Source: Mytilus californianus (Eukaryota). From it: a stretch of 64,000 nucleotides of DNA. Position 1 is the first letter of the stretch, and each line of letters begins with the position of its first letter. The stretch covers positions 4,960,001-5,024,000 of the forward strand of contig NW_026262581.1 in the NCBI RefSeq assembly GCF_021869535.1, read 5' to 3'. Below, one piece after another: positions 7,441 to 53,794 of this stretch. The position numbers were made by a program, and so were the translations under genes. The notes beneath the pieces were generated by a model, which worked only from the letters and a program-made list of their open reading frames with translations, had not been told where the DNA came from and searched no databases.

Positions 7441-9337
7441 GTAACAATAATGATTTTTTTTCCCCTTAATTTTTCAAGGGGAATAATTTCTGAAATTTGA
7501 GGGCAAAATTACTATATGTTTGAAAGTGGTAATATCCTTGTTATCTAAGTTGTTACAGTCTAAAAATCATCACTTTATGGCATAAATACAAAACGTTTTA
7601 AAAAGAATTTTTGGAAGCTACCTTAACATGATTTATGAATTCTCCTTTGTTAAGCTGTCAACTGAAACTGATTTTGAAACCAAATATTCTAGATCTTATA
7701 ATTTGCTAAAAAGACCTTTTGTGACTTTTTTCAAAGTGTTATTATGCTTTACAATAATTTTACACAAAATGTTTCACTATAGACAAACATGAATAAAAAA
7801 AAGAGGACAAGGAATTCAACTGACAAAAAATATGAATCTTTGCTCCATGTTAAACCTTAGAATAAGTATACAAAATCTTTATGATCTTCCAATTATATAT
7901 ATGAAACTTCTAGTTTTATTTTGAAACCTTTAAGTTCATCAATTTGCTTTTTTTAGAGACTCAATAAAAAAACAAACAAGTACTTGGAATTGCTCAATAA
8001 TGATATGCCCTGCTTTAAGTTTTTGGTAAACAGGGAGTCGAAAAGCCATGCCCTAACGACAGTCTGCACCAACATTTTTTCCAACTACTAGTCCAAAGAC
8101 CAATATTCCAGCATTGTTCTTATTTGTCTAAACAAAATTTTGCAAATACTTACTAGTCTGAATAAAATTTTACTAGTCTGGGACATCGAACTAGTGGCTA
8201 ACGGAGCATAATGCCATGCAGGCGAAAGCACATCACTGCAGGTATAGCATGCTCACATGATATTTGACTTCAAATTTTAGAAAGCCCTGATTTGTAGCTC
8301 CCAATAAAAAGACATGAACATTTTATATGTATAAGTATGTGGTAAACAGGAAGTTGCTAGAGCCTAGATGAGTGATAAATCTGAAAATGCATCACAGGGT
8401 ATATCATGATCACATGAAAGATTCATAACAAATACCGGAAAGCTCTGGTTGTAATTCTCAAGATAGATGTGACAAGACTTTAATGAGGGGGACCATCCAA
8501 CCAACAAAGACATAAACCAGCAATATACCGGTATATCATTAGGGGTGGTGTTATAAAAAGTAAAATCAATGACAATAGGTGAATATTAATCTTATTATTC
8601 TCTAATTTGTAGCTAAGTGTCTGGTCTGAAAGTCTTATTGTAGAAATCTCCCAAATTTTAGTCAATATTGGGAGGATTTAAAAAGATTTTGAGACAGTTG
8701 CTATCATTTTATGTATTGATAACAGTAGCTATTACTGGCCTTTTTACCAGGTGAGAAAAAACAGGATATTCATTCCTTTAAGATTAACTTTAATAAAAGA
8801 CCTTTGCTCACTCATAAACCCTCATAAAAATTTTCTTTCCATCTGTGCCTTTTATTTTAACCATTGATTGTCTCACATTTTGATCTTTAATAAGCGATCA
8901 TGATGTAATACAGTTCAGTAACTATTTCCTTGTATTTTTTTATAACACAATAAATTGGTATTTATGTAAATAACTGCTATTTTACAATGAAAAGGTGTTT
9001 CACTGAGAACTAGTACATTCTTGAAGCATGTCATAATATTATACACACATTTATTTTAACTTCTTTTAATAATTGAAATTTGTTCCCAAAAACAAATTAT
9101 CATTTTAAATATGCAGCTTTTAGAGTGGGTTCTGAAGGAAAACAATGTCATTCTTTCAGTGCCGACGGACATTCTGTGGCATAATATAACTTTTAAAAAA
9201 AAAATGTTTGAAACAAGGAACTATTTGAGTCTGGAATAATTTTTAATTCTGGAAAATTGATATCAGCTATATCATAGCAATCACATGTTCCATTGTAAAT
9301 GTTGACTATTTTACTATTCTAATATATACATATTTAC

Positions 9338-10361
9338 TAGTGTTGTCAAATTGAACAGTTTTGACTAACCAGTTACTCGGACAATCTTTCGACTGATCAT
9401 CTGGTCAACCGGTAGGCAAATTCGTGTTTTAAAGGTCTTCAGTACTCTACAAATGCACAGTTTTATAATAAGATGAGTTGAAATTTATACTTGGACATTA
9501 TAAGGCTTGGAATTGAGCAGTCCTGGTGAAGTTTTATTTCTAATAACCCAATACTACCAATTTGTAACAAGTGAAACTGCGAGCTACTGCTCACTGATGA
9601 TATCCCCTCCCAAATACTTGACGGTTAACAGGAAGTTGTTGAGTGATGAATCTGAAAACGCATCACACAGTATAACTGACTTATATAAACCCTGAAACCA
9701 AATTTCAGAAATCCTTGTAATGTAGTTCCTGAGAAAGATGCGACGAAAAATATTCATGGGACGGACTGACGGACAGACAGAGGTAAAACAGTATACATTA
9801 CTTTTTTAAAGCGGGGGTATAATAACTTCAGATTAAGAAGATGAAAAGCGTCTTAATCTTGGCGAATTGACAATGTCTTTAATTGGTGATTCATTGTTTC
9901 ATTTTCTCTGGTGTCCAAGAAAATTCTGTGGAGTGTTTTGAGATGATTAACATGTTACTCGTACCACACAGTATTATACATTAATTCCATTCACATTTTT
10001 ATATAGGTCTACGCAATATTAAATCAAAGTAAAATAATGACGTAGATCATAAATTTAATCAGGCTACAACTGTTCAAAATACATGTAATTATGTTTACTT
10101 GAGCCGATGGACAAGTCGTCTTCGTGTTAATTAATTTTGTAAAATTGGAGTTTTTTCAAGGTTTAACAATAGTAATCAATATACTGGACAATTGATCTGT
10201 CAAATTAATGAGCTAGACTATCATTTCAAAAATTAATTAATGATTTCAATACACATTTTTATCAAATCTATTAAAATTGAAAAAGGTCTCGTTTACTGGT
10301 TAGCATTTTTGGTATTCTATATTTGGTCCTTCCGTTAACCGACTAACATTTGACAATACTA
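9338..10361. mobile_element. Non-autonomous hAT transposon with 8-bp TSD
   Basis: TIRs TAGTGTTGTCAAA / TTTGACAATACTA (1 mismatch). Perfect TSD ATATTTAC at 9330-9337 and 10362-10369. Subterminal GACTAACC/GTTAACCG motifs. Confidence 0.85.
9501..9823 (+). mobile_element. 5'-truncated HINE/pearl-like fragment nested in the hAT element
   Basis: GACGGACTGACGGACAGACAG microsatellite followed by a 3' end GTAAAACAGTATAC...GCGGGGGTATAAT. Body is related to segments near 50-180, 8330-8460 and 30660-30850. Confidence 0.65.
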
Positions 10362-46835: not shown

Positions 46836-48682
46836 TATATAAATCGCATTCGGTGATATCACTAATGAGGGAAACCTAAGAGGATTTTGGTTACGACAAA
46901 TGGGACAAGTCCGTAATCATCTGTGACACAAATATTCCATAACAGTCAAACGATACATGATGGCGTCCATAAAACTTTCATAGAAATTACTTCACTTTTA
47001 TAGCCACAACGAATCTCAGATTCAATAATGTCCATGTAAGCATCAACCCCTTTCAAACAATTCATGATTTGAAACCCAAGCCCTAAAAATCGTATCAATC
47101 TTATGGAAGATTTATACTTAGGTACTGATGAAATGTTGCTATATAAAATGGAAAGTTCAAAATCGGAAAATGAAAAATATTTATTTGTCGTAAATTCATA
47201 TTTGCCAAATTGTGATCAGATCCTCGTGTCAATTTCTAGATGTAAGTCAATACATGATCAAACCTAAACGTGTCTGTGATATCCTTTATTGCAAGTTCAA
47301 TGGGATATATGTGATCAAGATAGCGGCAAGTGTAGTTAAAGAGTTATTGCATTTTTCTTTAGAACTTGAGCCCCGTTATGAAGTCTATATATTTGTACCA
47401 ATAGGAATGTCGACTGTCAATTAAAAGTGCTACCTTGTATGATATGGGATTTACAAATGTATTATCTCCTACTTTTGATACTTTGAGATTTCTAATTTTG
47501 TTTGTTTTCAGTGTACCTACTTGTGAGAGTTTCTGGAGTAGCCTTTCTTAGTTACCTTGTTAGTTTAATCTTGACTTTCAAAGGGAGATAACTAGCCCGA
47601 TTATCAATATTTCTGTACTGTTACGATATTACTTTGAAATTAATATTTCAGAAATTTTTACTGACGCAATGTTTACAGGTTATTACGCAAAAGACCCAGG
47701 TGTTACCATGCAATTTTGATATCCGTTTTTTTGTGTTGATTACTCTAGATTCCAAGTAATTTGCTTCGAGCATTATTGATGAAAAATAAGTCTCAAAAAG
47801 GCGCATATGTTCAACAGTTGCATTAAATAAGCATTGGTATCTTGTAATTTTGAATCATTACACAGAAGATACAAGGCTGCAAGATAAGGCTTGAAAGTCG
47901 GTCTAAATCGCAAACTAATGTGTATAATGCTGTAAACCACAGGTCTATGGTTATAAACATAACAGCCTGATCACATATTCCTTTTTTACATATAATACTG
48001 ATTTGTTGAATTTTTAATTCCCGTCGAAAATTTACAATCATCATGCGAGATATTTTCCTGCTTAAGTTGGCTTCACCAGTTCGGTGATTGCACATGAAGT
48101 TTTGGATTACCAATAATTAGTTTCTTTAGTCATTTCAGAATATTTTTTGTAGTTGAAAAAAAAATAGAGCCTGCGAAACTGAGCACCTCTTGCAGCCACA
48201 AATGCCTGGTGACCTCTACCTTTGATCTTAAACCTTCTGCTCTCCTTTTGCGAAAACATTGTGAAAACCATGTTTATTTTAACAAAAAAAATACGGACGG
48301 AATTAACTAGTATTACACTCATATTTTGCAACTCTATCCGGTAAAATTTATTGTTCATTTATAGGGTTCGTGTTTTCGTCATCATATTCATCATACCACA
48401 ATACAGGAATTACCAAAAGCATTGTACAGTACAACAACCTTCACCAACACCCTGCTCCTCCGGACAAAAATAGACACAAAACCAAAGATAAACAACAACA
48501 AACAACTTACGGTCCATATAGCCTGACTTGGTACAGGCATACAATGTGATGACAATTCTATGTACAAAGGGGTAAATTATGTACCAAACGTTATATAAGA
48601 TTAAACCTCTTTCATCTTTATTTTTCTAAACATGTTCATTAAATATCGACCAAAGGTTTTGCCATTTTCATATTCGTTTTAT

Positions 48683-49222
48683 TTACTGTCTTATCCTGTT
48701 TCTTCGTTGTTGTGCGCTTTCTGCATATAGTATAACAAAGAACAGGAAGCTGTATAAAATCATATATGGAAAAAATCCGTTTGCTATTATCATTATGGAA
48801 AAAGTATATCCACACCAAATCAATGCCATTACAGACCGACTTCGGCATTCAAATATTCCGAACAAAGTTTCTTGGATTTCATAGATCCAATTTCGGAAGA
48901 CCTCTACAAACCCTACAAACATCGGTCTGCGCTGCTGTCGATTCCAGACAACAAGGCGATCCAAGTTGTCCATCAGATCACTGTTTGAAGAAGTGTCCGA
49001 AAAAGAGTCCGATTGCTCGGAAAAATCATCAGCATTAATTCTTCCATTGAGAGATTCATCACTTCCATCGAACCTAGGAAATGAAATGGCATCGACCCGA
49101 CAAGGAAGCCGACTATCCTCTTCGACAGAAACATCCAGATCTCCTTCCATATCGCTTACTCGTTCTGATATTGAGTCATCGCTTTGTGTGGCAATAGACC
49201 GAACAGCAACATAACCTTCATC
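48683..49222 (-). CDS. Membrane-anchored RING protein, last exon (acidic Ser/Asp linker, ~38-aa hydrophobic hairpin, basic tail QQRRNRIRQ)
   Basis: Acceptor tttgttagtttcag|GAT, phase 0, in frame with ORF 48683..49150; stop TAA at 48683-48685. Confidence 0.72.
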   Translation of the reverse strand, partial: DEGYVAVRSIATQSDDSISERVSDMEGDLDVSVEEDSRLPCRVDAISFPRFDGSDESLNGRINADDFSEQSDSFSDTSSNSDLMDNLDRLVVWNRQQRRPMFVGFVEVFRNWIYEIQETLFGIFECRSRSVMALIWCGYTFSIMIIANGFFPYMILYSFLFFVILYAESAQQRRNRIRQ

Positions 49223-51086
49223 CTGAAACTAACAAATCAAAATCTTAGTAATTCTCCCCAAAATTATTTTTGGACCCAAGAAAACGTGAAATATTGATTG
49301 ATCAAGTTTTGGCTATTTATATATAGCCATCTTAGGTAAGAAATCAATACAAGATTTCAAGAGTATTCTAAGAGGTCCAACAAGCTATTCTCAAAGCCAA
49401 CAGCCAAAACACCTTTTATGCAAGTATAAATAAGCTTTACCAAAAAGCTTGCCTAATCTCAGCAACATTCAAAGTGGATATATCTTAAAATATTTACTGT
49501 GCATCTTTTAAAATAATAGTTACCTTGGCTTATATAAGACATCTAATAATTGAAAATATATAAATAATTATTATCTGTGGCATGACCATAATAATTTCAC
49601 CGAAAGGTAAGGGTAAAAAACTGTTTGGTATTTTTTTCTTATGCCATTTTGTGGGGGGGGGGGGGGGTTACTTCCTCGTGGCTCCGTACTTTAATTTTAA
49701 TTACATTGGTCAATTAGATCAAAGAAGCCTTTTGTAGCCGCAAATCCAGGATCTGTCGCTGTATAATCTGGAATCTTTATTATATTACGGACTCCTGAAG
49801 GTCGAGCAATTTGGGAAATTAGTATACGTACGTTTTGATGCACAATATATTCTACTTAGGATTGAGTGCTTCTTGTAGCAATTTTGATATGGTGAATAAG
49901 TGGTGACTGAAGGACATTTTATTTGAAGAGTCGAGATAAATTATCAACGGGTTAGGGTTAACAACTTAGGTTTTTTTTGGGGGGGCGCTCACAAACATGT
50001 TTACGATCGCCACATTCTTTTATATGTGCCTGTTCAAAGTCAGGAGACTGTAGTTGGTCCATGTCCATTATATATGTTTTTCGTGAATCGTATTGATATA
50101 AATTAGGCCGTTAGTTTAATCGTTTGAATGGTTTTACATTTTCGTGTTGGGGCCTTTTGTAGCTGACGATACGCTAAGGATTCTTCTCATCATTAAAGGC
50201 CGTACGGTGATCTATAATTGCTTATATCCACGTCAATTCTGGTAGATATAGACTAATTAATTAATTCATTGACAATCATACCTAATCTCATTATTTTTAT
50301 ATTAAAATGTTTGTTGGTATGACAATTAAAATAATACCGGGGAATATCAAAATAATAAGTTCATTCACGAAGGTTAAAGAATTTATTATGTCTGGCCCTT
50401 TTAAATATTTAATAGTGCATACCTGTATGGAAAAAAGATACTCGAAGACATGTTATATATGTTGAACTACAATATAACCAAAATAAACAGACTTGCTTAA
50501 TATAATCAACTATCCGATGGAGGGCAAGTCAACTCTATTTGCAAATTAAGGCGAAGCATAAATAATTTGGCGGTTTTCGAACTTTAATGAAATGATCATT
50601 GCTCTATTATAAAACATATAAGTTTAAATAAATGTTGTGGGCAGGTTTCAAAACAAATTTAAAGTGAAGAAAATGTATTTTTGGTCAGGTTTAAAACAAA
50701 ATAGAATGCTTTTACAGTATCTTTACGCGCATTCTATACATTCATAGATTTGCTTCACAAAGTTTTAATTGATCTTTAGGAGTATAATTGTTACGTACAT
50801 CGTTCTTTGATATTCAGAGGCAGTTCAACAAGAACTAATTGCATACGACATTTCAAAAAAATCCGATGAAATAATTTGACTCTCGGCTTGGAAATTAAAA
50901 CGAAGAGAGAATTATCTTGTTTTCTAATTGTTTTTTTGTAACCTTTATATCTATCTATTTCTGCCCGTTCCATGGACATGACTAATTCTAATTCCCAATA
51001 GAATGTGATCTTTTTTTTTCTTTGTGACTCCTTTGATTTATATTTGTTGCAAATATGACTACATTTGTAACGCTTATTTGTCCTAC

Positions 51087-51270
51087 CTTTTTATCTTGTT
51101 CACGCCAGTTTTCAACAAAATCTTGAATGGAGTAATTGACGTACATTCGCCTGTTCAGAACTGATGAAACTAGTGTCCTTTTTCGACATGTCGGACAAGA
51201 GAACTTCAATCTTGCGAATGGACATTGAGGAAATTGTTCTTTTGTCAGTCTGGCAAGATTTTTAAGGCAG
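51087..51270 (-). CDS. RING protein exon: second half of the C3HC4 finger (CLKNL...FSCPTCRK...NYSIQDFVENW)
   Basis: Acceptor ttgtctttataatttcag|C, donor AAG|gtagga; phase 2 to 0. Confidence 0.85.
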
Positions 51271-51482
51271 CTGAAATTATAAAGACAATTTGTTTTGTGC
51301 ATACTGATGGGACTCGAAACAAATTTTTCTATTTTACATCGTGACAATCCGAACCTGACAAGCAAGTTTATTGTGGAATTTTCACGCTTGCGCGATTTCT
51401 TATTTTATATCTTCGTTTCATATATTTGTTATAATGAGCATTTATTCGTTTGTAGAATCTTGTAGTATTGGGCTATTCTTAC

Positions 51483-51591
51483 CTTGTACAAAAGCTGTGT
51501 CCACATTGCAGTGTATGTGGTCGACGGTACACACCAAGACAAATGCTGCATCGAAGAAGCTTACTCCAAGACGTAAAAGAACTATTTGCGT
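51483..51591 (-). CDS. RING protein exon: first half of the C3HC4 finger (LLRCSICLGVYRRPHTLQCGHSFCT)
   Basis: Donor AG|gtaaga, phase 2, joins the next exon to give C-x2-C-x11-C-x-H-x2-C-x2-C-x20-C-x2-C. An alternative in-frame start (MEIVD) lies at 51604. Confidence 0.87.
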
Positions 51592-51638
51592 CTACGATTT
51601 CCATAATACAAAAGTGCAAATCCAGCCATATATTATAC

Positions 51639-51678
51639 CTTTACTTGACAAGTTTGGTGAAGTCTTGACCGGCGCCAT
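51639..51678 (-). CDS. RING protein, probable first coding exon (MAPVKTSPNLSSK)
   Basis: Strong Kozak context ACCATGG; donor G|gtataa, phase 1. Requires a 47-nt intron (51592-51638). This model gives 290 aa, versus 281 aa from the 51604 start. Confidence 0.5.
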
Positions 51679-51814
51679 GGTAAAAGCACAACTATTAGTG
51701 ACGTCTGTGTGCTTTTTTGGAATTGTGACGCTGTATATAGTTGCTGTTTTCTGATTTTCCCGCAACAACAGAAGAATTACTAGTTGCTGGTGGATGTAGT
51801 AAAGCATAGAATAA
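51679..51814. promoter_or_regulatory. Putative compact bidirectional promoter
   Basis: 136 bp between divergent ATGs; CRE-like TGACGTCT (51699-51706), TGACG (51726-51730), TATATA (51734-51739), E2F-type TTTCCCGC (51756-51763). Confidence 0.55.
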
Positions 51815-52186
51815 ATGATGGGAAGCAGGAGCCCTAGTCCAAAGAAAGTGACATTTGCTGATGAACAACCGAGACACAGTCATTCTCCTATTCCCTTGAT
51901 ACGCGACAACATGTCGTTCCTTCATAGGCGATTGGTAGAAATGATGGAGGAAGCTAGACAGCTCCGTGATGAAACTTCGTCGTTGGTGGGGGATTATTTA
52001 GATTTAGAGAAAAAATTCAGGAGTCTTAGACTAGTGAGCAAAGATACTATGAAAGAGGTAGAACAGCACAATCAGAACCTTGACGAAGTGATTTATCTCA
52101 ACAAAGTAATAAGACATCTAAAGGATGCTGACAGTAACATGCAATATGTGCCTTGTGTAGTGTATAAGAATGATACATCTCGATAG
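51815..52186 (+). CDS. Intronless 123-aa protein: SP-rich N-terminus with an RVxF-type motif (KKVTFADE), then a predicted coiled coil
   Basis: Open 372-nt frame with protein-like composition and heptad periodicity over about residues 38-104; AATAAA at 52436-52441. No family recognised. Confidence 0.68.
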   Translation: MMGSRSPSPKKVTFADEQPRHSHSPIPLIRDNMSFLHRRLVEMMEEARQLRDETSSLVGDYLDLEKKFRSLRLVSKDTMKEVEQHNQNLDEVIYLNKVIRHLKDADSNMQYVPCVVYKNDTSR

Positions 52187-52435
52187 AGATAACAGTGAGC
52201 CATATACAAGCAGCAAAGAGTACATCTATGGGGCATTATTTCACATACGGTAACGTTCGGATAAAAAGTGTTGGCAAACACTATCAGTGTAATTTAGATG
52301 AAGAGTTTGCAACTGTTAAAATATGAAAGTGTTTTATTGTTACTTATACTTATCATTTTGCTTTTGCTTTCAATAATTTTGTTTCAAGATCTATTGTTCA
52401 TTTTATATTTTGTATTTCCAATGTATTTTCAATGT

Positions 52436-52441
52436 AATAAA
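52436..52441 (+). terminator. Candidate polyadenylation signal for the 123-aa ORF
   Basis: AATAAA about 250 nt after the stop, followed by a T/GT-rich tract; TTTTAT at 52401-52406. Confidence 0.4.
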
Positions 52442-53794
52442 TCAATGTTTAAGTGTTTTGTTATTCTTTTTTTTTATTTAATCTATTGCTTAATTATAGA
52501 TCTATTTGCATAAGTCAATTTTCGCCAATATCAGTCATTATACGGACGCAGGCGAAAGACTGTGTTTCCAGTAGTTCAAAAAACGGATTCTTATGAAATC
52601 GTGTGCCTTCTTTTACTTTTTAGGGATCTTAACCAAAGTAGATCTATACTAGATTAAGCATAACCGTAACCTATACCTAACCCTGACCCTTACAGTAAAA
52701 GAAGTTAAAAAAAATTGCATGCGATCAGCGCAAGTGGTATTCAATATTTTATCGATATTTATGTGCATTTGATACAAGTTCCCAGATTCATAATTTATTT
52801 ATTTTCGTCTTTTGAAGAAAAAAACGATACATATATAATTTCTTTCCGCATTAAAATGAACTTGCATGTGACTAATTGCGCGTAAAAAAGCAAAGGCAAA
52901 TTTTCTCTTTATTTATTTCAAAATCAGGGTCATTTGCACACGTCTACGAATCATTGTTTCTAAACATTATTCAAACCAGATTACAAATGCTTATAGACCT
53001 TTCAAAAACACAACTGATCAAACATTGAAAAGGAATGTCGTGATATAGCAATTCATTTTAGAATATAAAAAAAGATAGAGAGGACACCAATTTGTACACA
53101 TTTTCCACCAGAATACTTTATAACTATACACGAGTTGTCTCGTAGAGAGTCGACATAATAATGCAATTCAATATCTGCGATACATTTCAAAACAGGAATT
53201 AGAATGAAATAAAATTTTATGAAAGAAATGTATATTTTTACAGCAGTTTAACCTTCATTACAAATTTTGTTTTATTAAACAACAAAACGATTTGAAAACA
53301 GATGTGTATCAGTCAATGCTGACAGTTATAAGTCAGAGAAACCATGGTTATCTATTAGTTGAAATTTGGCTTTGAACAAGCTTCCATTATCTGCGAGTAC
53401 TCTTAGTTCGGTAATGTGTCTTTGTGTAGCTGCATGCCTTTTTTGGGGTGCTTGATAAAGATCGAATGAGTCAAGCCAACTAATTTTTGATGTTGGTCCT
53501 TATGTTGTGCTGTAACAACAATTTCTCGGGAAAGGGCAGGTTGTGCGCTCAATTTTTCCTCACCACCTTCTTTATGTGCCTGTTCTTAGCCAGGAGCTTT
53601 AAATCCAGTAGGTGTCGTTGGTTGTTGTCTGTCATTATTATTTTTCGTTTTGTGTTAGTATAAATCATGACGTAATTTTTTTGGAGCTGTTTCTCATTAA
53701 GCTTTATGAAAAAGTATGATGATATCAAAAGGGTCCATTTGATATACAAGCGAAGAATGAAGGACCACAACATGACCAATCAAATAACAAGAAA

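What the first reader, a model, noticed from the sequence alone, without database searches (positions are those of the whole stretch)
48683..52441. Compact head-to-head pair: membrane-anchored RING E3 ligase and an intronless PP1-motif coiled-coil protein
Seen: a spliced C3HC4 RING gene (minus) and a 123-aa ORF (plus) start 136 bp apart, around CRE-like, TATA and E2F-type motifs. The RING gene's 5' introns are only 47 and 212 nt, whereas most introns in the other genes here are kb-long. Established: divergent genes this close usually share a promoter; RING plus C-terminal TM is the architecture of RNF5/RNF185-type membrane E3s; [KR]xVxF followed by acidic residues is the PP1 docking motif. Inference: a co-regulated ubiquitin/phosphatase module, possibly cell-cycle or germline linked. 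I recognise neither protein as a named gene, so it may be a lineage-specific two-gene system. This is the best candidate for an undescribed system in the window.
Basis: partly seen in the sequence, partly recalled or inferred. Interest (0 to 1): 0.72.

Follow-up and report, generated by a model that had tools for sequence, protein, structure and literature searches.

The report
Conserved bivalve RING ligase/PP1-motif gene pair
Two real, expressed, single-copy mollusc genes – a membrane-anchored RING ubiquitin ligase and a small coiled-coil protein with a phosphatase-1 docking motif – start back to back at one tiny shared promoter, and this pairing is kept in at least nine bivalve lineages, though nothing yet shows that the two proteins work together.

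Summary
The pair is real. On the minus strand lies a three-exon gene for a TRIM-type C3HC4 RING, an acidic, Ser-rich linker and a C-terminal two-helix membrane hairpin. On the plus strand lies an intronless 123-aa ORF: a disordered N-terminus with KKVTF, then one 84-residue helix. RNA contigs from three runs cover only the exons, show both splice joints, and cover the small ORF.

One detail is wrong. The "47-nt intron" stays in the transcripts, so ATG 51678 opens a 28-codon upstream ORF. The RING protein starts at 51604, and the coding starts are 210 bp apart, not 136.

Both genes are single copy. Head-to-head linkage holds in nine lineages, including Saccostrea and Pinctada. It was not found within 10 kb in Lottia, Potamilus or Mactra.

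A profile search of 1.84 billion proteins found 20 hits to the small protein, and every named one is a mollusc. A strict RVxF motif sits at residues 5–15 in eight members from six deep lineages but is absent in oysters. A CRE lies 46–161 bp upstream of the small gene in all 13 loci.

The proteins are most likely a PP1-targeting subunit and a membrane E3 ligase that share a CRE promoter. Physical coupling between them is untested; the complex model gave no verdict.

The parts
48683..49228 (-). RING gene, last coding exon. It holds the acidic, Ser-rich linker, a juxtamembrane helix, the membrane hairpin and the stop TAA (48683-48685). An AATAAA overlaps the stop.
   Evidence: Translation. Joint 49228|51087 in three RNA runs. 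90% identical to P0003. Linker net charge -15 with 17 Ser.
48722..48832 (-). Two-helix hydrophobic hairpin (VMALIWCGYTFSIMIIA-NG-FFPYMILYSFLFFVILYA) with basic residues on both flanks.
   Evidence: Hydropathy. AF2 model of P0003 has helices 234-253 and 255-284 at pLDDT 76-90. Many invariant columns across 17 sequences.
49229..51086 (-). Intron 2 of the RING gene (1858 nt).
   Evidence: Skipped in contigs of X1, X2 and X3 with CT..AC ends on the plus strand, i.e. GT..AG on the minus strand. No RNA coverage apart from a 39-nt repeat piece.
51087..51270 (-). RING gene, middle coding exon: second half of the RING (ends in CPTC) and the helix after the RING.
   Evidence: Translation. Both joints seen. 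Matches L007 positions 207-389.
51271..51482 (-). Intron 1 of the RING gene (212 nt).
   Evidence: Joint 51270|51483 in three runs and in L007.
51483..51604 (-). RING gene, first coding exon part, from the true start ATG 51604. It holds the first half of the C3HC4 RING (CSIC...CGHSFC).
   Evidence: Pfam zf-C3HC4, zf-RING_UBOX and zf-C3HC4_2 at E 3-4e-6. P0003 starts at the equivalent Met.
51592..51678 (-). Upstream ORF of 28 codons in the RING leader.
   Evidence: Contiguous in X1 contig 51483-51664. Retained in L007, where the donor reads GC. A 4-nt deletion in L008.
51665..51770 (.). Core divergent promoter between the outermost transcribed bases seen. It holds a CRE-like TGACGTCT at 51699-51706, TGACG at 51726-51730, TATATA at 51734-51739 and an E2F-like TTTCCCGC at 51756-51763.
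   Evidence: Motif scan. A CRE sits at the matching place in all 13 loci. TATATA lies about 32 bp before the first base of the plus-strand contig, 51771; that it sets the start site is inferred.
51815..52186 (+). Intronless gene for the 123-aa small coiled-coil protein. The start may be the second ATG at 51818, the only one present in L008.
   Evidence: ORF. RNA contigs. Single copy. dN/dS 0.16 against L008. Homologues.
51842..51856 (+). RVxF-type PP1 docking motif KKVTF (residues 10-14), followed by ADE.
   Evidence: Matches [HKR][ACHKMNQRSTV]V[CHKNQRST][FW] (consensus as quoted in PMC3792071). Chance 0.4-2.8% per shuffled sequence. Aligned with KKVRF, KHVRF, RRVRF and KRVSF and RKVTF. pLDDT below 50 for residues 10-22.
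51887..52138 (+). Single long helix (residues 25-108) with a heptad pattern, ending in the family signature LDEVIYLNxxIxHL.
   Evidence: AF2 gives H25-108 at pLDDT 94-98. 71% hydrophobic residues at a/d positions in the best register. Invariant Y94 and L102 across 19 sequences.
52436..52441 (+). AATAAA, a possible poly(A) signal of the small gene.
   Evidence: Sequence only. No RNA contig laid beyond 52220, so unverified.

Best explanation
Two separate single-copy protein-coding genes are transcribed in opposite directions from one promoter of about 100 bp centred on a cAMP-response-element-like site.

Gene A (minus strand, three coding exons, about 285 aa by its 90%-identical relative P0003) encodes an N-terminal TRIM-type C3HC4 RING, a disordered acidic, Ser-rich linker, an amphipathic juxtamembrane helix and a strongly conserved two-helix hydrophobic hairpin flanked by basic residues. 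It most likely works as a membrane-anchored ubiquitin E3 ligase with both ends in the cytosol. An upstream ORF overlapping its start codon probably holds its translation down.

Gene B (plus strand, intronless, 123 aa) belongs to a small-protein family found so far only in molluscs. It has a disordered N-terminus carrying a strict RVxF motif, one 84-residue coiled-coil helix and a conserved C-terminal tail (M-x-Y/F/L-x-P-C-x-V). It most likely docks the PP1 catalytic subunit through KKVTF and uses the coiled coil to pair with itself or with a target, that is, it acts as a PP1 targeting or regulatory subunit.

The CRE appears to belong to gene B, because it also sits upstream of B where A is absent. 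In one group of bivalves gene A sits head to head with B and shares that CRE region, and the arrangement has been kept since.

Shown: the gene models, transcription, single-copy status, purifying selection, conservation of linkage, motif and CRE, and the restricted distribution. Inferred: E3 activity, membrane topology, PP1 binding, CREB/ATF control and the role of the upstream ORF.
For: Gene models and transcription: exon-only RNA coverage and both splice joints in three runs, with plus-ORF contigs at 1.2-4.5 times the depth of the RING gene; spliced relative transcript L007.

RING: Pfam zf-C3HC4 at 1.9e-8 on P0003 and zf-C3HC4_4 at 1.2e-9 on P0011. The best solved relatives are the TRIM25, TRIM2, TRIM21 and TRIM5 RINGs at E about 1e-6.

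Hairpin: hydropathy, AF2 helices 212-232, 234-253 and 255-284, invariant W, GYT, PYM, LYS and YxE columns.

Small protein: AF2 single helix 25-108 with a disordered N-terminus. dN/dS 0.16. A profile search of 1.84e9 representative proteins gave 20 hits at E <= 1e-3, and the named ones are Potamilus, Lottia and Mactra.

RVxF: a strict motif at residues 5-15 in eight members from six deep lineages, with 0.4-2.8% chance per sequence.

Linkage: head to head in the window, L008, L005, L019, L014, L017, Saccostrea L004, Pinctada L009 and L010, while the oyster's flanking wnt and nuclear-receptor genes are not in the window.

CRE: exact TGACGTCA in 8 loci and a 7-of-8 match in 5, lying 46-161 bp upstream of gene B's ATG in 13 of 13 loci. 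The background is about one exact site per 16 kb of the same loci.

Single copy.
Against: No strand-specific or raw-read support: the one raw-read RNA run gave only 3 reads, so start sites and orientation rest on ORFs and splice signals. PP1 binding, E3 activity and membrane insertion are not tested. Oysters, Pinctada, L010, Potamilus, Lottia and Mactra lack the RVxF motif, so PP1 docking cannot be the family's universal function. The RING part of the AF2 model is poor, since only two full-length sequences were available. Most relatives come from unnamed Logan or ENA contigs, so the taxonomic spread of the pair is known only through Saccostrea and Pinctada.
Confidence: 0.7

Rival explanations
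1. True two-protein module. The small coiled-coil protein binds the RING-membrane protein, for example at its post-RING or juxtamembrane helix. It would then bring PP1 to the ligase's Ser/Asp/Glu-rich linker or to shared substrates, coupling dephosphorylation and ubiquitination at one membrane. Linkage would be kept because the two products must be made in proportion.
For: Linkage is kept in nine lineages, including ones with 22-30% identity in the small protein, while flanking genes changed. The linker is rich in S-x-x-D/E clusters, which are plausible phosphosites. Both transcripts occur in the same three RNA runs, but those runs were selected because they hold this stretch, so this is weak.
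Against: The complex model gave no verdict (score 0.00), which counts neither way. Linked lineages such as oyster, Pinctada and L010 lack the RVxF motif, so any PP1 bridge is not general. The small gene exists without a RING neighbour within 10 kb in Lottia, Potamilus and Mactra. Shared regulatory DNA alone can hold divergent pairs together.
Confidence: 0.2
2. The small protein is a structural coiled-coil adaptor whose core function has nothing to do with PP1. On this reading the N-terminal [KR][KR]VxF in the window's clade serves another purpose or is a secondary, dispensable addition.
For: The family-wide conserved part is the helix and the LDEVIYLN..I.HL...M.x.PC.V tail, not the N-terminus. 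11 of the 19 aligned members lack any RVxF.
Against: The motif fits the strict consensus in all eight carriers and sits at the same distance from the N-terminus. It lies in predicted disorder, and its surroundings have diverged completely while it has not. That pattern marks a selected short linear motif.
Confidence: 0.2
3. The plus ORF is a chance ORF in a promoter-associated or antisense non-coding transcript of the RING gene.
For: It is short, intronless and starts within about 100 bp of another gene's 5' end. No strand information is available.
Against: dN/dS is 0.16 against a relative with dS 0.26. A 59%-identical homologue carries an in-frame insertion of about 60 residues. Homologues occur in oysters, Pinctada, unionids, a heterodont clam and a limpet. 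Its RNA depth exceeds that of the RING gene.
Confidence: 0.02

Closest known systems
TRIM-family RING E3 ligases (solved RINGs of TRIM25, TRIM2, TRIM21, TRIM5); by architecture the ER-anchored TRIM13 and TRIM59 (their anchoring is from my own knowledge)
   Same: The RING sequence is closest to TRIM RINGs (E about 1e-6) and matches Pfam zf-C3HC4_4 and zf-RING_UBOX. A helix follows the RING. There is a C-terminal membrane anchor, as in TRIM13 and TRIM59.
   Different: Pfam finds no B-box, and AF2 predicts no coiled coil inside the RING protein. The anchor is a two-helix hairpin with its own invariant motif. No Pfam family or meaningful PDB relative matches it, and two protein word searches returned only members of this family. 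It is therefore not a TRIM by definition.
RNF5/RNF185-type small membrane RING ligases
   Same: A small protein with an N-terminal C3HC4 RING and two hydrophobic helices at the C-terminus, with the RING facing the cytosol.
   Different: No sequence evidence of kinship was obtained. The best RING matches are TRIMs, and the linker and hairpin match nothing named.
RVxF-type PP1-interacting proteins, such as the small regulators and targeting subunits discussed in PMC3792071 (LAP1B) and PMC6249868 (PPP1R35)
   Same: A strict [HKR][ACHKMNQRSTV]V[CHKNQRST][FW] motif in a disordered segment next to a structured or oligomerising part.
   Different: No homology to any named PP1 regulator: Pfam, PDB and Atlas returned only generic coiled-coil noise. 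The motif is present in only part of the family.
Conserved bidirectional-promoter gene pairs of animals (own knowledge, e.g. histone H2A-H2B, BRCA1-NBR2)
   Same: 5' ends less than 1 kb apart (here about 100 bp), shared factor sites, and an arrangement kept over long evolutionary time.
   Different: Both partners are lineage-restricted and uncharacterised. One partner (the small gene with its CRE) is older and also exists unpaired.

Membership tests
RING-type E3 ubiquitin ligase (C3HC4) | Eight zinc ligands in the order C-x2-C ... C-x-H-x2-C-x2-C ... C-x2-C, and a match to RING profiles above threshold | tested here: met
   Window exons carry CSIC, C-G-H, FC-TS-C and CPTC. P0003 scores zf-C3HC4 34.4 bits (cut-off 21) and zf-RING_UBOX 33.3 (cut-off 25.2). 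P0011 scores zf-C3HC4_4 38.5 (cut-off 30).
RING-type E3 ubiquitin ligase (C3HC4) | Ubiquitin transfer with an E2 enzyme | not testable with these tools
   Needs an in vitro ubiquitination assay.
TRIM (tripartite motif) family | A B-box zinc finger after the RING | tested here: not met
   No zf-B_box hit in P0003 or P0011 even at E <= 1.
TRIM (tripartite motif) family | A coiled-coil domain after the B-box | tested here: not met
   In the AF2 model of P0003 the RING is followed by one short helix (86-106) and then a disordered linker, 107-189.
RNF5/RNF185 family | Sequence orthology to RNF5 or RNF185 beyond the generic RING | not tested
   No RNF5 or RNF185 sequence was available. The PDB search listed only TRIM, BRCA1/BARD1, LNX, TRAF, RNF168, RNF125 and similar RINGs.
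RNF5/RNF185 family | N-terminal RING plus C-terminal membrane helices | tested here: met
   Hydropathy and AF2 show two helices, 234-253 and 255-284, in P0003. This is an architectural match only.
RVxF-type PP1-interacting protein | A motif fitting [HKR][ACHKMNQRSTV]V[CHKNQRST][FW] | tested here: met
   KKVTF at residues 10-14. Consensus as quoted in PMC3792071.
RVxF-type PP1-interacting protein | The motif lies in an accessible, disordered segment and is conserved among homologues | tested here: met
   pLDDT below 50 for residues 10-22. KKVTF, KKVRF, KHVRF, RRVRF, KRVSF and RKVTF align in eight members. The motif is absent in 11 other members.
RVxF-type PP1-interacting protein | Direct binding to the PP1 catalytic subunit that depends on the motif | not testable with these tools
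   The species' own PP1c would have to be joined from exons, and that step was left out. No reference PP1c is offered to the complex tool.
Bidirectional-promoter gene pair | Divergent transcripts with 5' ends less than 1 kb apart | tested here: met
   RNA contigs reach 51664 (RING gene) and start at 51771 (small gene). Strand is inferred from ORFs and splice signals, not from stranded reads.
Bidirectional-promoter gene pair | The arrangement is conserved in other species | tested here: met
   Nine lineages. Not seen in Lottia, Potamilus or Mactra within 10 kb.

The most novel reading that the evidence does not exclude
A bivalve-specific, CREB/ATF-driven membrane signalling module. In this reading the small coiled-coil protein bridges PP1 to a TRIM-like RING ligase held in a membrane by a sequence-invariant hairpin. 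A cAMP or stress signal would then switch on, from one promoter, a phosphatase adaptor and the ligase whose phospho-linker or substrates it controls. The pair would be a new kind of coupled ubiquitin/phosphatase unit, born when a new RING gene landed beside an older CRE gene.
Probability: 0.15. Interest if true: 0.6.

Novelty: new member of a known kind. Interest (0 to 1): 0.42.

Why it matters
The finding turns two 'hypothetical proteins' into defined families with testable functions. One is a likely PP1 targeting subunit whose named relatives are all molluscs. The other is a membrane RING ligase seen so far only in a group of bivalves, with an unusually invariant membrane hairpin. It is also a clean example of a lineage-specific gene settling head to head beside an older gene and sharing its CRE. 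That makes it a useful case for studying how bidirectional promoters arise and why pairs stay linked while their surroundings rearrange. For bivalve biology, where stress, immunity and larval development are studied by transcriptomics, the pair offers a compact promoter with a conserved CRE for reporter work. It does not yet bear on any long-standing open question.

Tried and rejected
- **Pfam** on the small ORF gave only sub-threshold coiled-coil matches (HAP1_N 19 bits against a cut-off of 33.9).
- **ESM Atlas** gave no usable hit for either protein.
- **PDB sequence and profile searches** returned only generic coiled coils for the small protein and chance PsaJ matches for the hairpin. I made no fold search, because one model is a single helix and the other has low confidence in its RING.
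- **Complex prediction** (RING-membrane protein P0003 with the window's small protein) scored 0.00 with no verdict, which is evidence neither for nor against binding.
- **Raw reads of the species' own RNA run (X21)** gave only 3 reads on the stretch, so there is no strand or start-site information.
- **Synteny with the oyster's neighbours** (wnt upstream, nuclear receptor downstream): no wnt or zf-C4 match lies in the window. The nearest wnt exons are about 360 kb away on the same contig. The weak tblastx flank matches are therefore not meaningful.
- **JGI metagenome contigs**: a scan with the RING-membrane alignment found none. A scan with A2 gave one new linked locus, L019.
- **Literature searches** for the Lottia locus tag, for bivalve RING bidirectional promoters, and for an RVxF protein combined with RING and transmembrane terms found nothing relevant.
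- **The family tree** of the small protein is unresolved at depth, so I cannot say whether the RVxF motif is ancestral or gained.
- Exons were searched separately by reference, and the natural full-length relatives P0003 and P0011 stood in for the whole protein. A PP1c model of this species was not assembled for the same reason.


Full report
**What is in the sequence**

The window is a stretch of a 1.65-Gb animal genome. Its relatives that carry a name are bivalve molluscs.

On the minus strand, three coding exons (51604-51483, 51270-51087, 49228-48683) encode an N-terminal C3HC4 RING that is split across the first intron. After the RING come a short helix, a long acidic, Ser-rich stretch and a strongly hydrophobic C-terminus. 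On the plus strand, an intronless ORF (51815-52186) encodes 123 residues, with KKVTFADE near the N-terminus.

Each exon was searched by reference, and the natural full-length relatives P0003 (285 aa, 90% identical in the last exon) and P0011 (Saccostrea cucullata, 275 aa) stood in for the whole protein.

**Gene models and transcription**

I laid contigs of three RNA runs on 48400-52700. One run is from the window's own species label, one is a marine metatranscriptome and one is a mollusc transcriptome. They cover only the exons.

- All three runs show the joints 49228|51087 (1858 nt skipped) and 51270|51483 (212 nt skipped), both with GT..AG ends on the minus strand.
- The spliced transcript contig L007 of a close relative shows the same two junctions. 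It also shows that the last exon begins at 49228, adding Phe-Gln to the nearest-AG model.
The own-species contig runs unbroken across 51483-51664. L007 retains the stretch and reads GC where the donor would be. L008 has a 4-nt deletion inside it.
- ATG 51678 therefore opens a 28-codon upstream ORF that ends at 51592 and overlaps the real start at 51604.
- The small ORF is covered by contigs 51771-52187, 51817-52187 and 51782-52220, at 1.2 to 4.5 times the depth of the RING gene. Introns, the 106 bp between the genes and the downstream flank are all uncovered, which argues against DNA carry-over.
- Strand could not be read, because the only raw-read run yielded three reads.

**Both are genuine, constrained, single-copy genes**

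Each gene matches only itself in the 1.65-Gb assembly. Against close relatives, dN/dS is 0.16 for the small ORF (vs L008), and 0.04 and 0.21 for the first two RING exons (vs L007). A 59%-identical homologue of the small protein (P0002) carries an in-frame insertion of about 60 residues yet keeps both ends.

**The RING protein**

- Pfam finds only RING models: zf-C3HC4 at 1.9e-8 in P0003 and zf-C3HC4_4 at 1.2e-9 in P0011. There is no B-box.
- The closest solved sequences are the RINGs of TRIM25, TRIM2, TRIM21 and TRIM5, at E about 1e-6.
- The AF2 model, built on a 17-row alignment, is poor over the RING because only two rows cover it. It is confident over the C-terminus: a juxtamembrane helix 212-232 followed by helices 234-253 and 255-284, broken at Asn-Gly. 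Residues 107-189 are disordered.
- The hydrophobic block is two segments of 17-18 residues with Arg-rich flanks on both sides. This fits a hairpin with both ends in the cytosol.
- Its W, GYT, PYM, LYS and YxE positions are invariant, and the Asn-Gly turn nearly so, across sequences that are otherwise 33-40% identical. That is more conservation than a simple membrane anchor needs.
- Two protein word searches found only about 20 clusters. Named sources are Saccostrea and Pinctada imbricata, and nothing lay outside this family.
- The protein is a membrane RING ligase by architecture, TRIM-like in its RING, but not a TRIM. I have no evidence that it is related to RNF5 or RNF185.

**The small protein**

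- AF2 gives one helix, residues 25-108, at pLDDT 94-98. The N-terminus is disordered (pLDDT below 50 for residues 10-22) and the tail is non-helical. The best heptad register has 71% hydrophobic residues at a/d positions.
- Pfam, Atlas and PDB give only coiled-coil noise.
- A profile search of 1.84 billion representative proteins found 20 hits at E <= 1e-3. One is a long coiled-coil false positive. The rest are short proteins sharing the signature LDEVIYLN..I.HL......M.x.PC.V.
- The named hits come from Potamilus streckersoni (a unionid mussel), Mactra antiquata (a heterodont clam) and Lottia gigantea (a limpet). As far as HMMER can see, the family is found only in molluscs.

**The PP1 motif**

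The consensus used here is [HKR][ACHKMNQRSTV]V[CHKNQRST][FW], as quoted in PMC3792071. An extended form is quoted in PMC4794898.

The motif occurs once each, at residues 5-15, in eight members: the window, L008, P0002, P0023, P0024, P0025, P0026 and L019. The forms are KKVTF, KKVRF, KHVRF, RRVRF, KRVSF and RKVTF. The chance rate is 0.4-2.8% per shuffled sequence. These carriers sit on six deep branches separated by more than two substitutions per site, and their flanks no longer align. That is the signature of a selected short linear motif.

The motif is absent from the oysters, Pinctada, L010, Potamilus, Lottia and Mactra. The Mactra-type subfamily carries a different N-terminal motif. PP1 docking is therefore likely in the window's clade but is not the family's universal function.

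**Linkage**

The RING first exon and the small ORF lie head to head in nine lineages:

| Locus | Source | Distance between coding starts or aligned parts |
|---|---|---|
| window | this genome | 210 bp between coding ATGs |
| L008 | close relative | 208 bp between coding ATGs |
| L005 | 59%-identity relative | 184 bp between coding ATGs |
| L019 | metagenome contig | 160 bp between coding ATGs |
| L014 | P0023 | about 170 bp |
| L017 | P0026 type | about 270 bp |
| L004 | Saccostrea cucullata | 170 bp between coding ATGs |
| L009 | Pinctada imbricata | 135 bp between coding ATGs |
| L010 | ENA contig | 231 bp between coding ATGs |

The RING gene's three-exon structure is also kept, as seen where the contig spans the whole gene (L004, L009, L010, L014).

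The oyster's flanking wnt and nuclear-receptor genes are not in the window. So the pair has stayed together while its surroundings changed.

In Lottia, Potamilus and Mactra, tblastn found no RING-membrane homologue within 10 kb of the small gene. I could not search those genomes as a whole.

**The promoter**

The 106 bp between the outermost transcribed bases holds TGACGTCT (51699), TGACG (51726), TATATA (51734) and TTTCCCGC (51756).

- A CRE lies 46-161 bp upstream of the small gene's ATG in all 13 loci read. It is exact (TGACGTCA) in eight and a 7-of-8 match in five. This includes Lottia, Potamilus, Mactra and L016, where no RING neighbour is seen.
- Elsewhere in the same roughly 190 kb, the exact octamer occurs about once per 16 kb. 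The chance of one falling in such an interval is about 1% per locus.
- The CRE therefore appears to belong to the small gene, and the RING gene shares it where the two are paired.
- The E2F-like site recurs only in L008 and, twice, in the oyster. The TATA box recurs only in L008.
- TATATA lies about 32 bp before the first base of the own-species plus-strand contig, 51771. This suggests, but does not show, a TATA-directed start.

**Do the proteins work together?**

This is not known. The complex prediction returned no verdict. The deep conservation of the pair is compatible with a functional module. It is equally compatible with two genes that cannot be separated because they share one small regulatory element. 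The linked lineages without RVxF, and the unlinked small genes in other molluscs, argue against a general PP1-to-ligase bridge. I put physical or functional coupling at about 0.2.

**Verdict**

The 47-nt intron and the 136-bp figure need correcting, and the 'module' remains a hypothesis. The parts belong to known kinds: a RING E3 ligase, an RVxF PP1 partner and a bidirectional promoter. They are new, uncharacterised families with restricted distribution. Interest is moderate.

Noticed in passing
window 51592-51678 (minus); L007 10-96; L008 about 711-800; L004 about 9975-10001; L009 about 8730-8752: The RING gene's leader carries upstream ATGs in every lineage where it could be read. The window has a 28-codon upstream ORF overlapping the main ATG. 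L007 keeps it, and L008 shifts its frame with a 4-nt deletion. Very short upstream ORFs (one is ATG-GCG-TAA) precede the oyster and Pinctada starts. This suggests translational damping of the ligase.
   Followed up: partly
L011 9886 (Lottia), L012 8627 (Potamilus), L013 9955 (Mactra), L016 456: An exact TGACGTCA sits 46-115 bp upstream of the small gene even where no RING neighbour is present. The family looks like a conserved CRE-driven gene across molluscs.
   Followed up: yes
window 52187-52189: RNA contigs of two runs both stop at 52187. A third shows an inserted C behind 52188 and A>T at 52189. This is a polymorphic indel just after the stop codon that breaks the assemblies, not a splice site.
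   Followed up: partly
window 50197-50235 (inside RING intron 2): A 39-nt piece of a 760-nt RNA contig (depth 28) matches here, with unlike sequence on both sides. It is probably a short repeat or mobile-element fragment expressed from elsewhere.
   Followed up: no
P0032 and P0038 (Mactra antiquata), N-terminal region: A subfamily of longer small-protein homologues (283-289 aa) lacks the RVxF motif. Instead it shares another conserved N-terminal motif, EYDDDAIL[AT]FNP, of unknown function.
   Followed up: no
G000:C1:4584034-4598751 (about 360 kb before the window): A wnt gene lies on the same contig about 360 kb away. In Saccostrea a wnt gene ends within 5 kb of the pair. This may be a remnant of loose synteny.
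   Followed up: no
window 49656-49672 and 49978-49986: Homopolymer G runs (about 16 and 8 G) lie inside RING intron 2.
   Followed up: no
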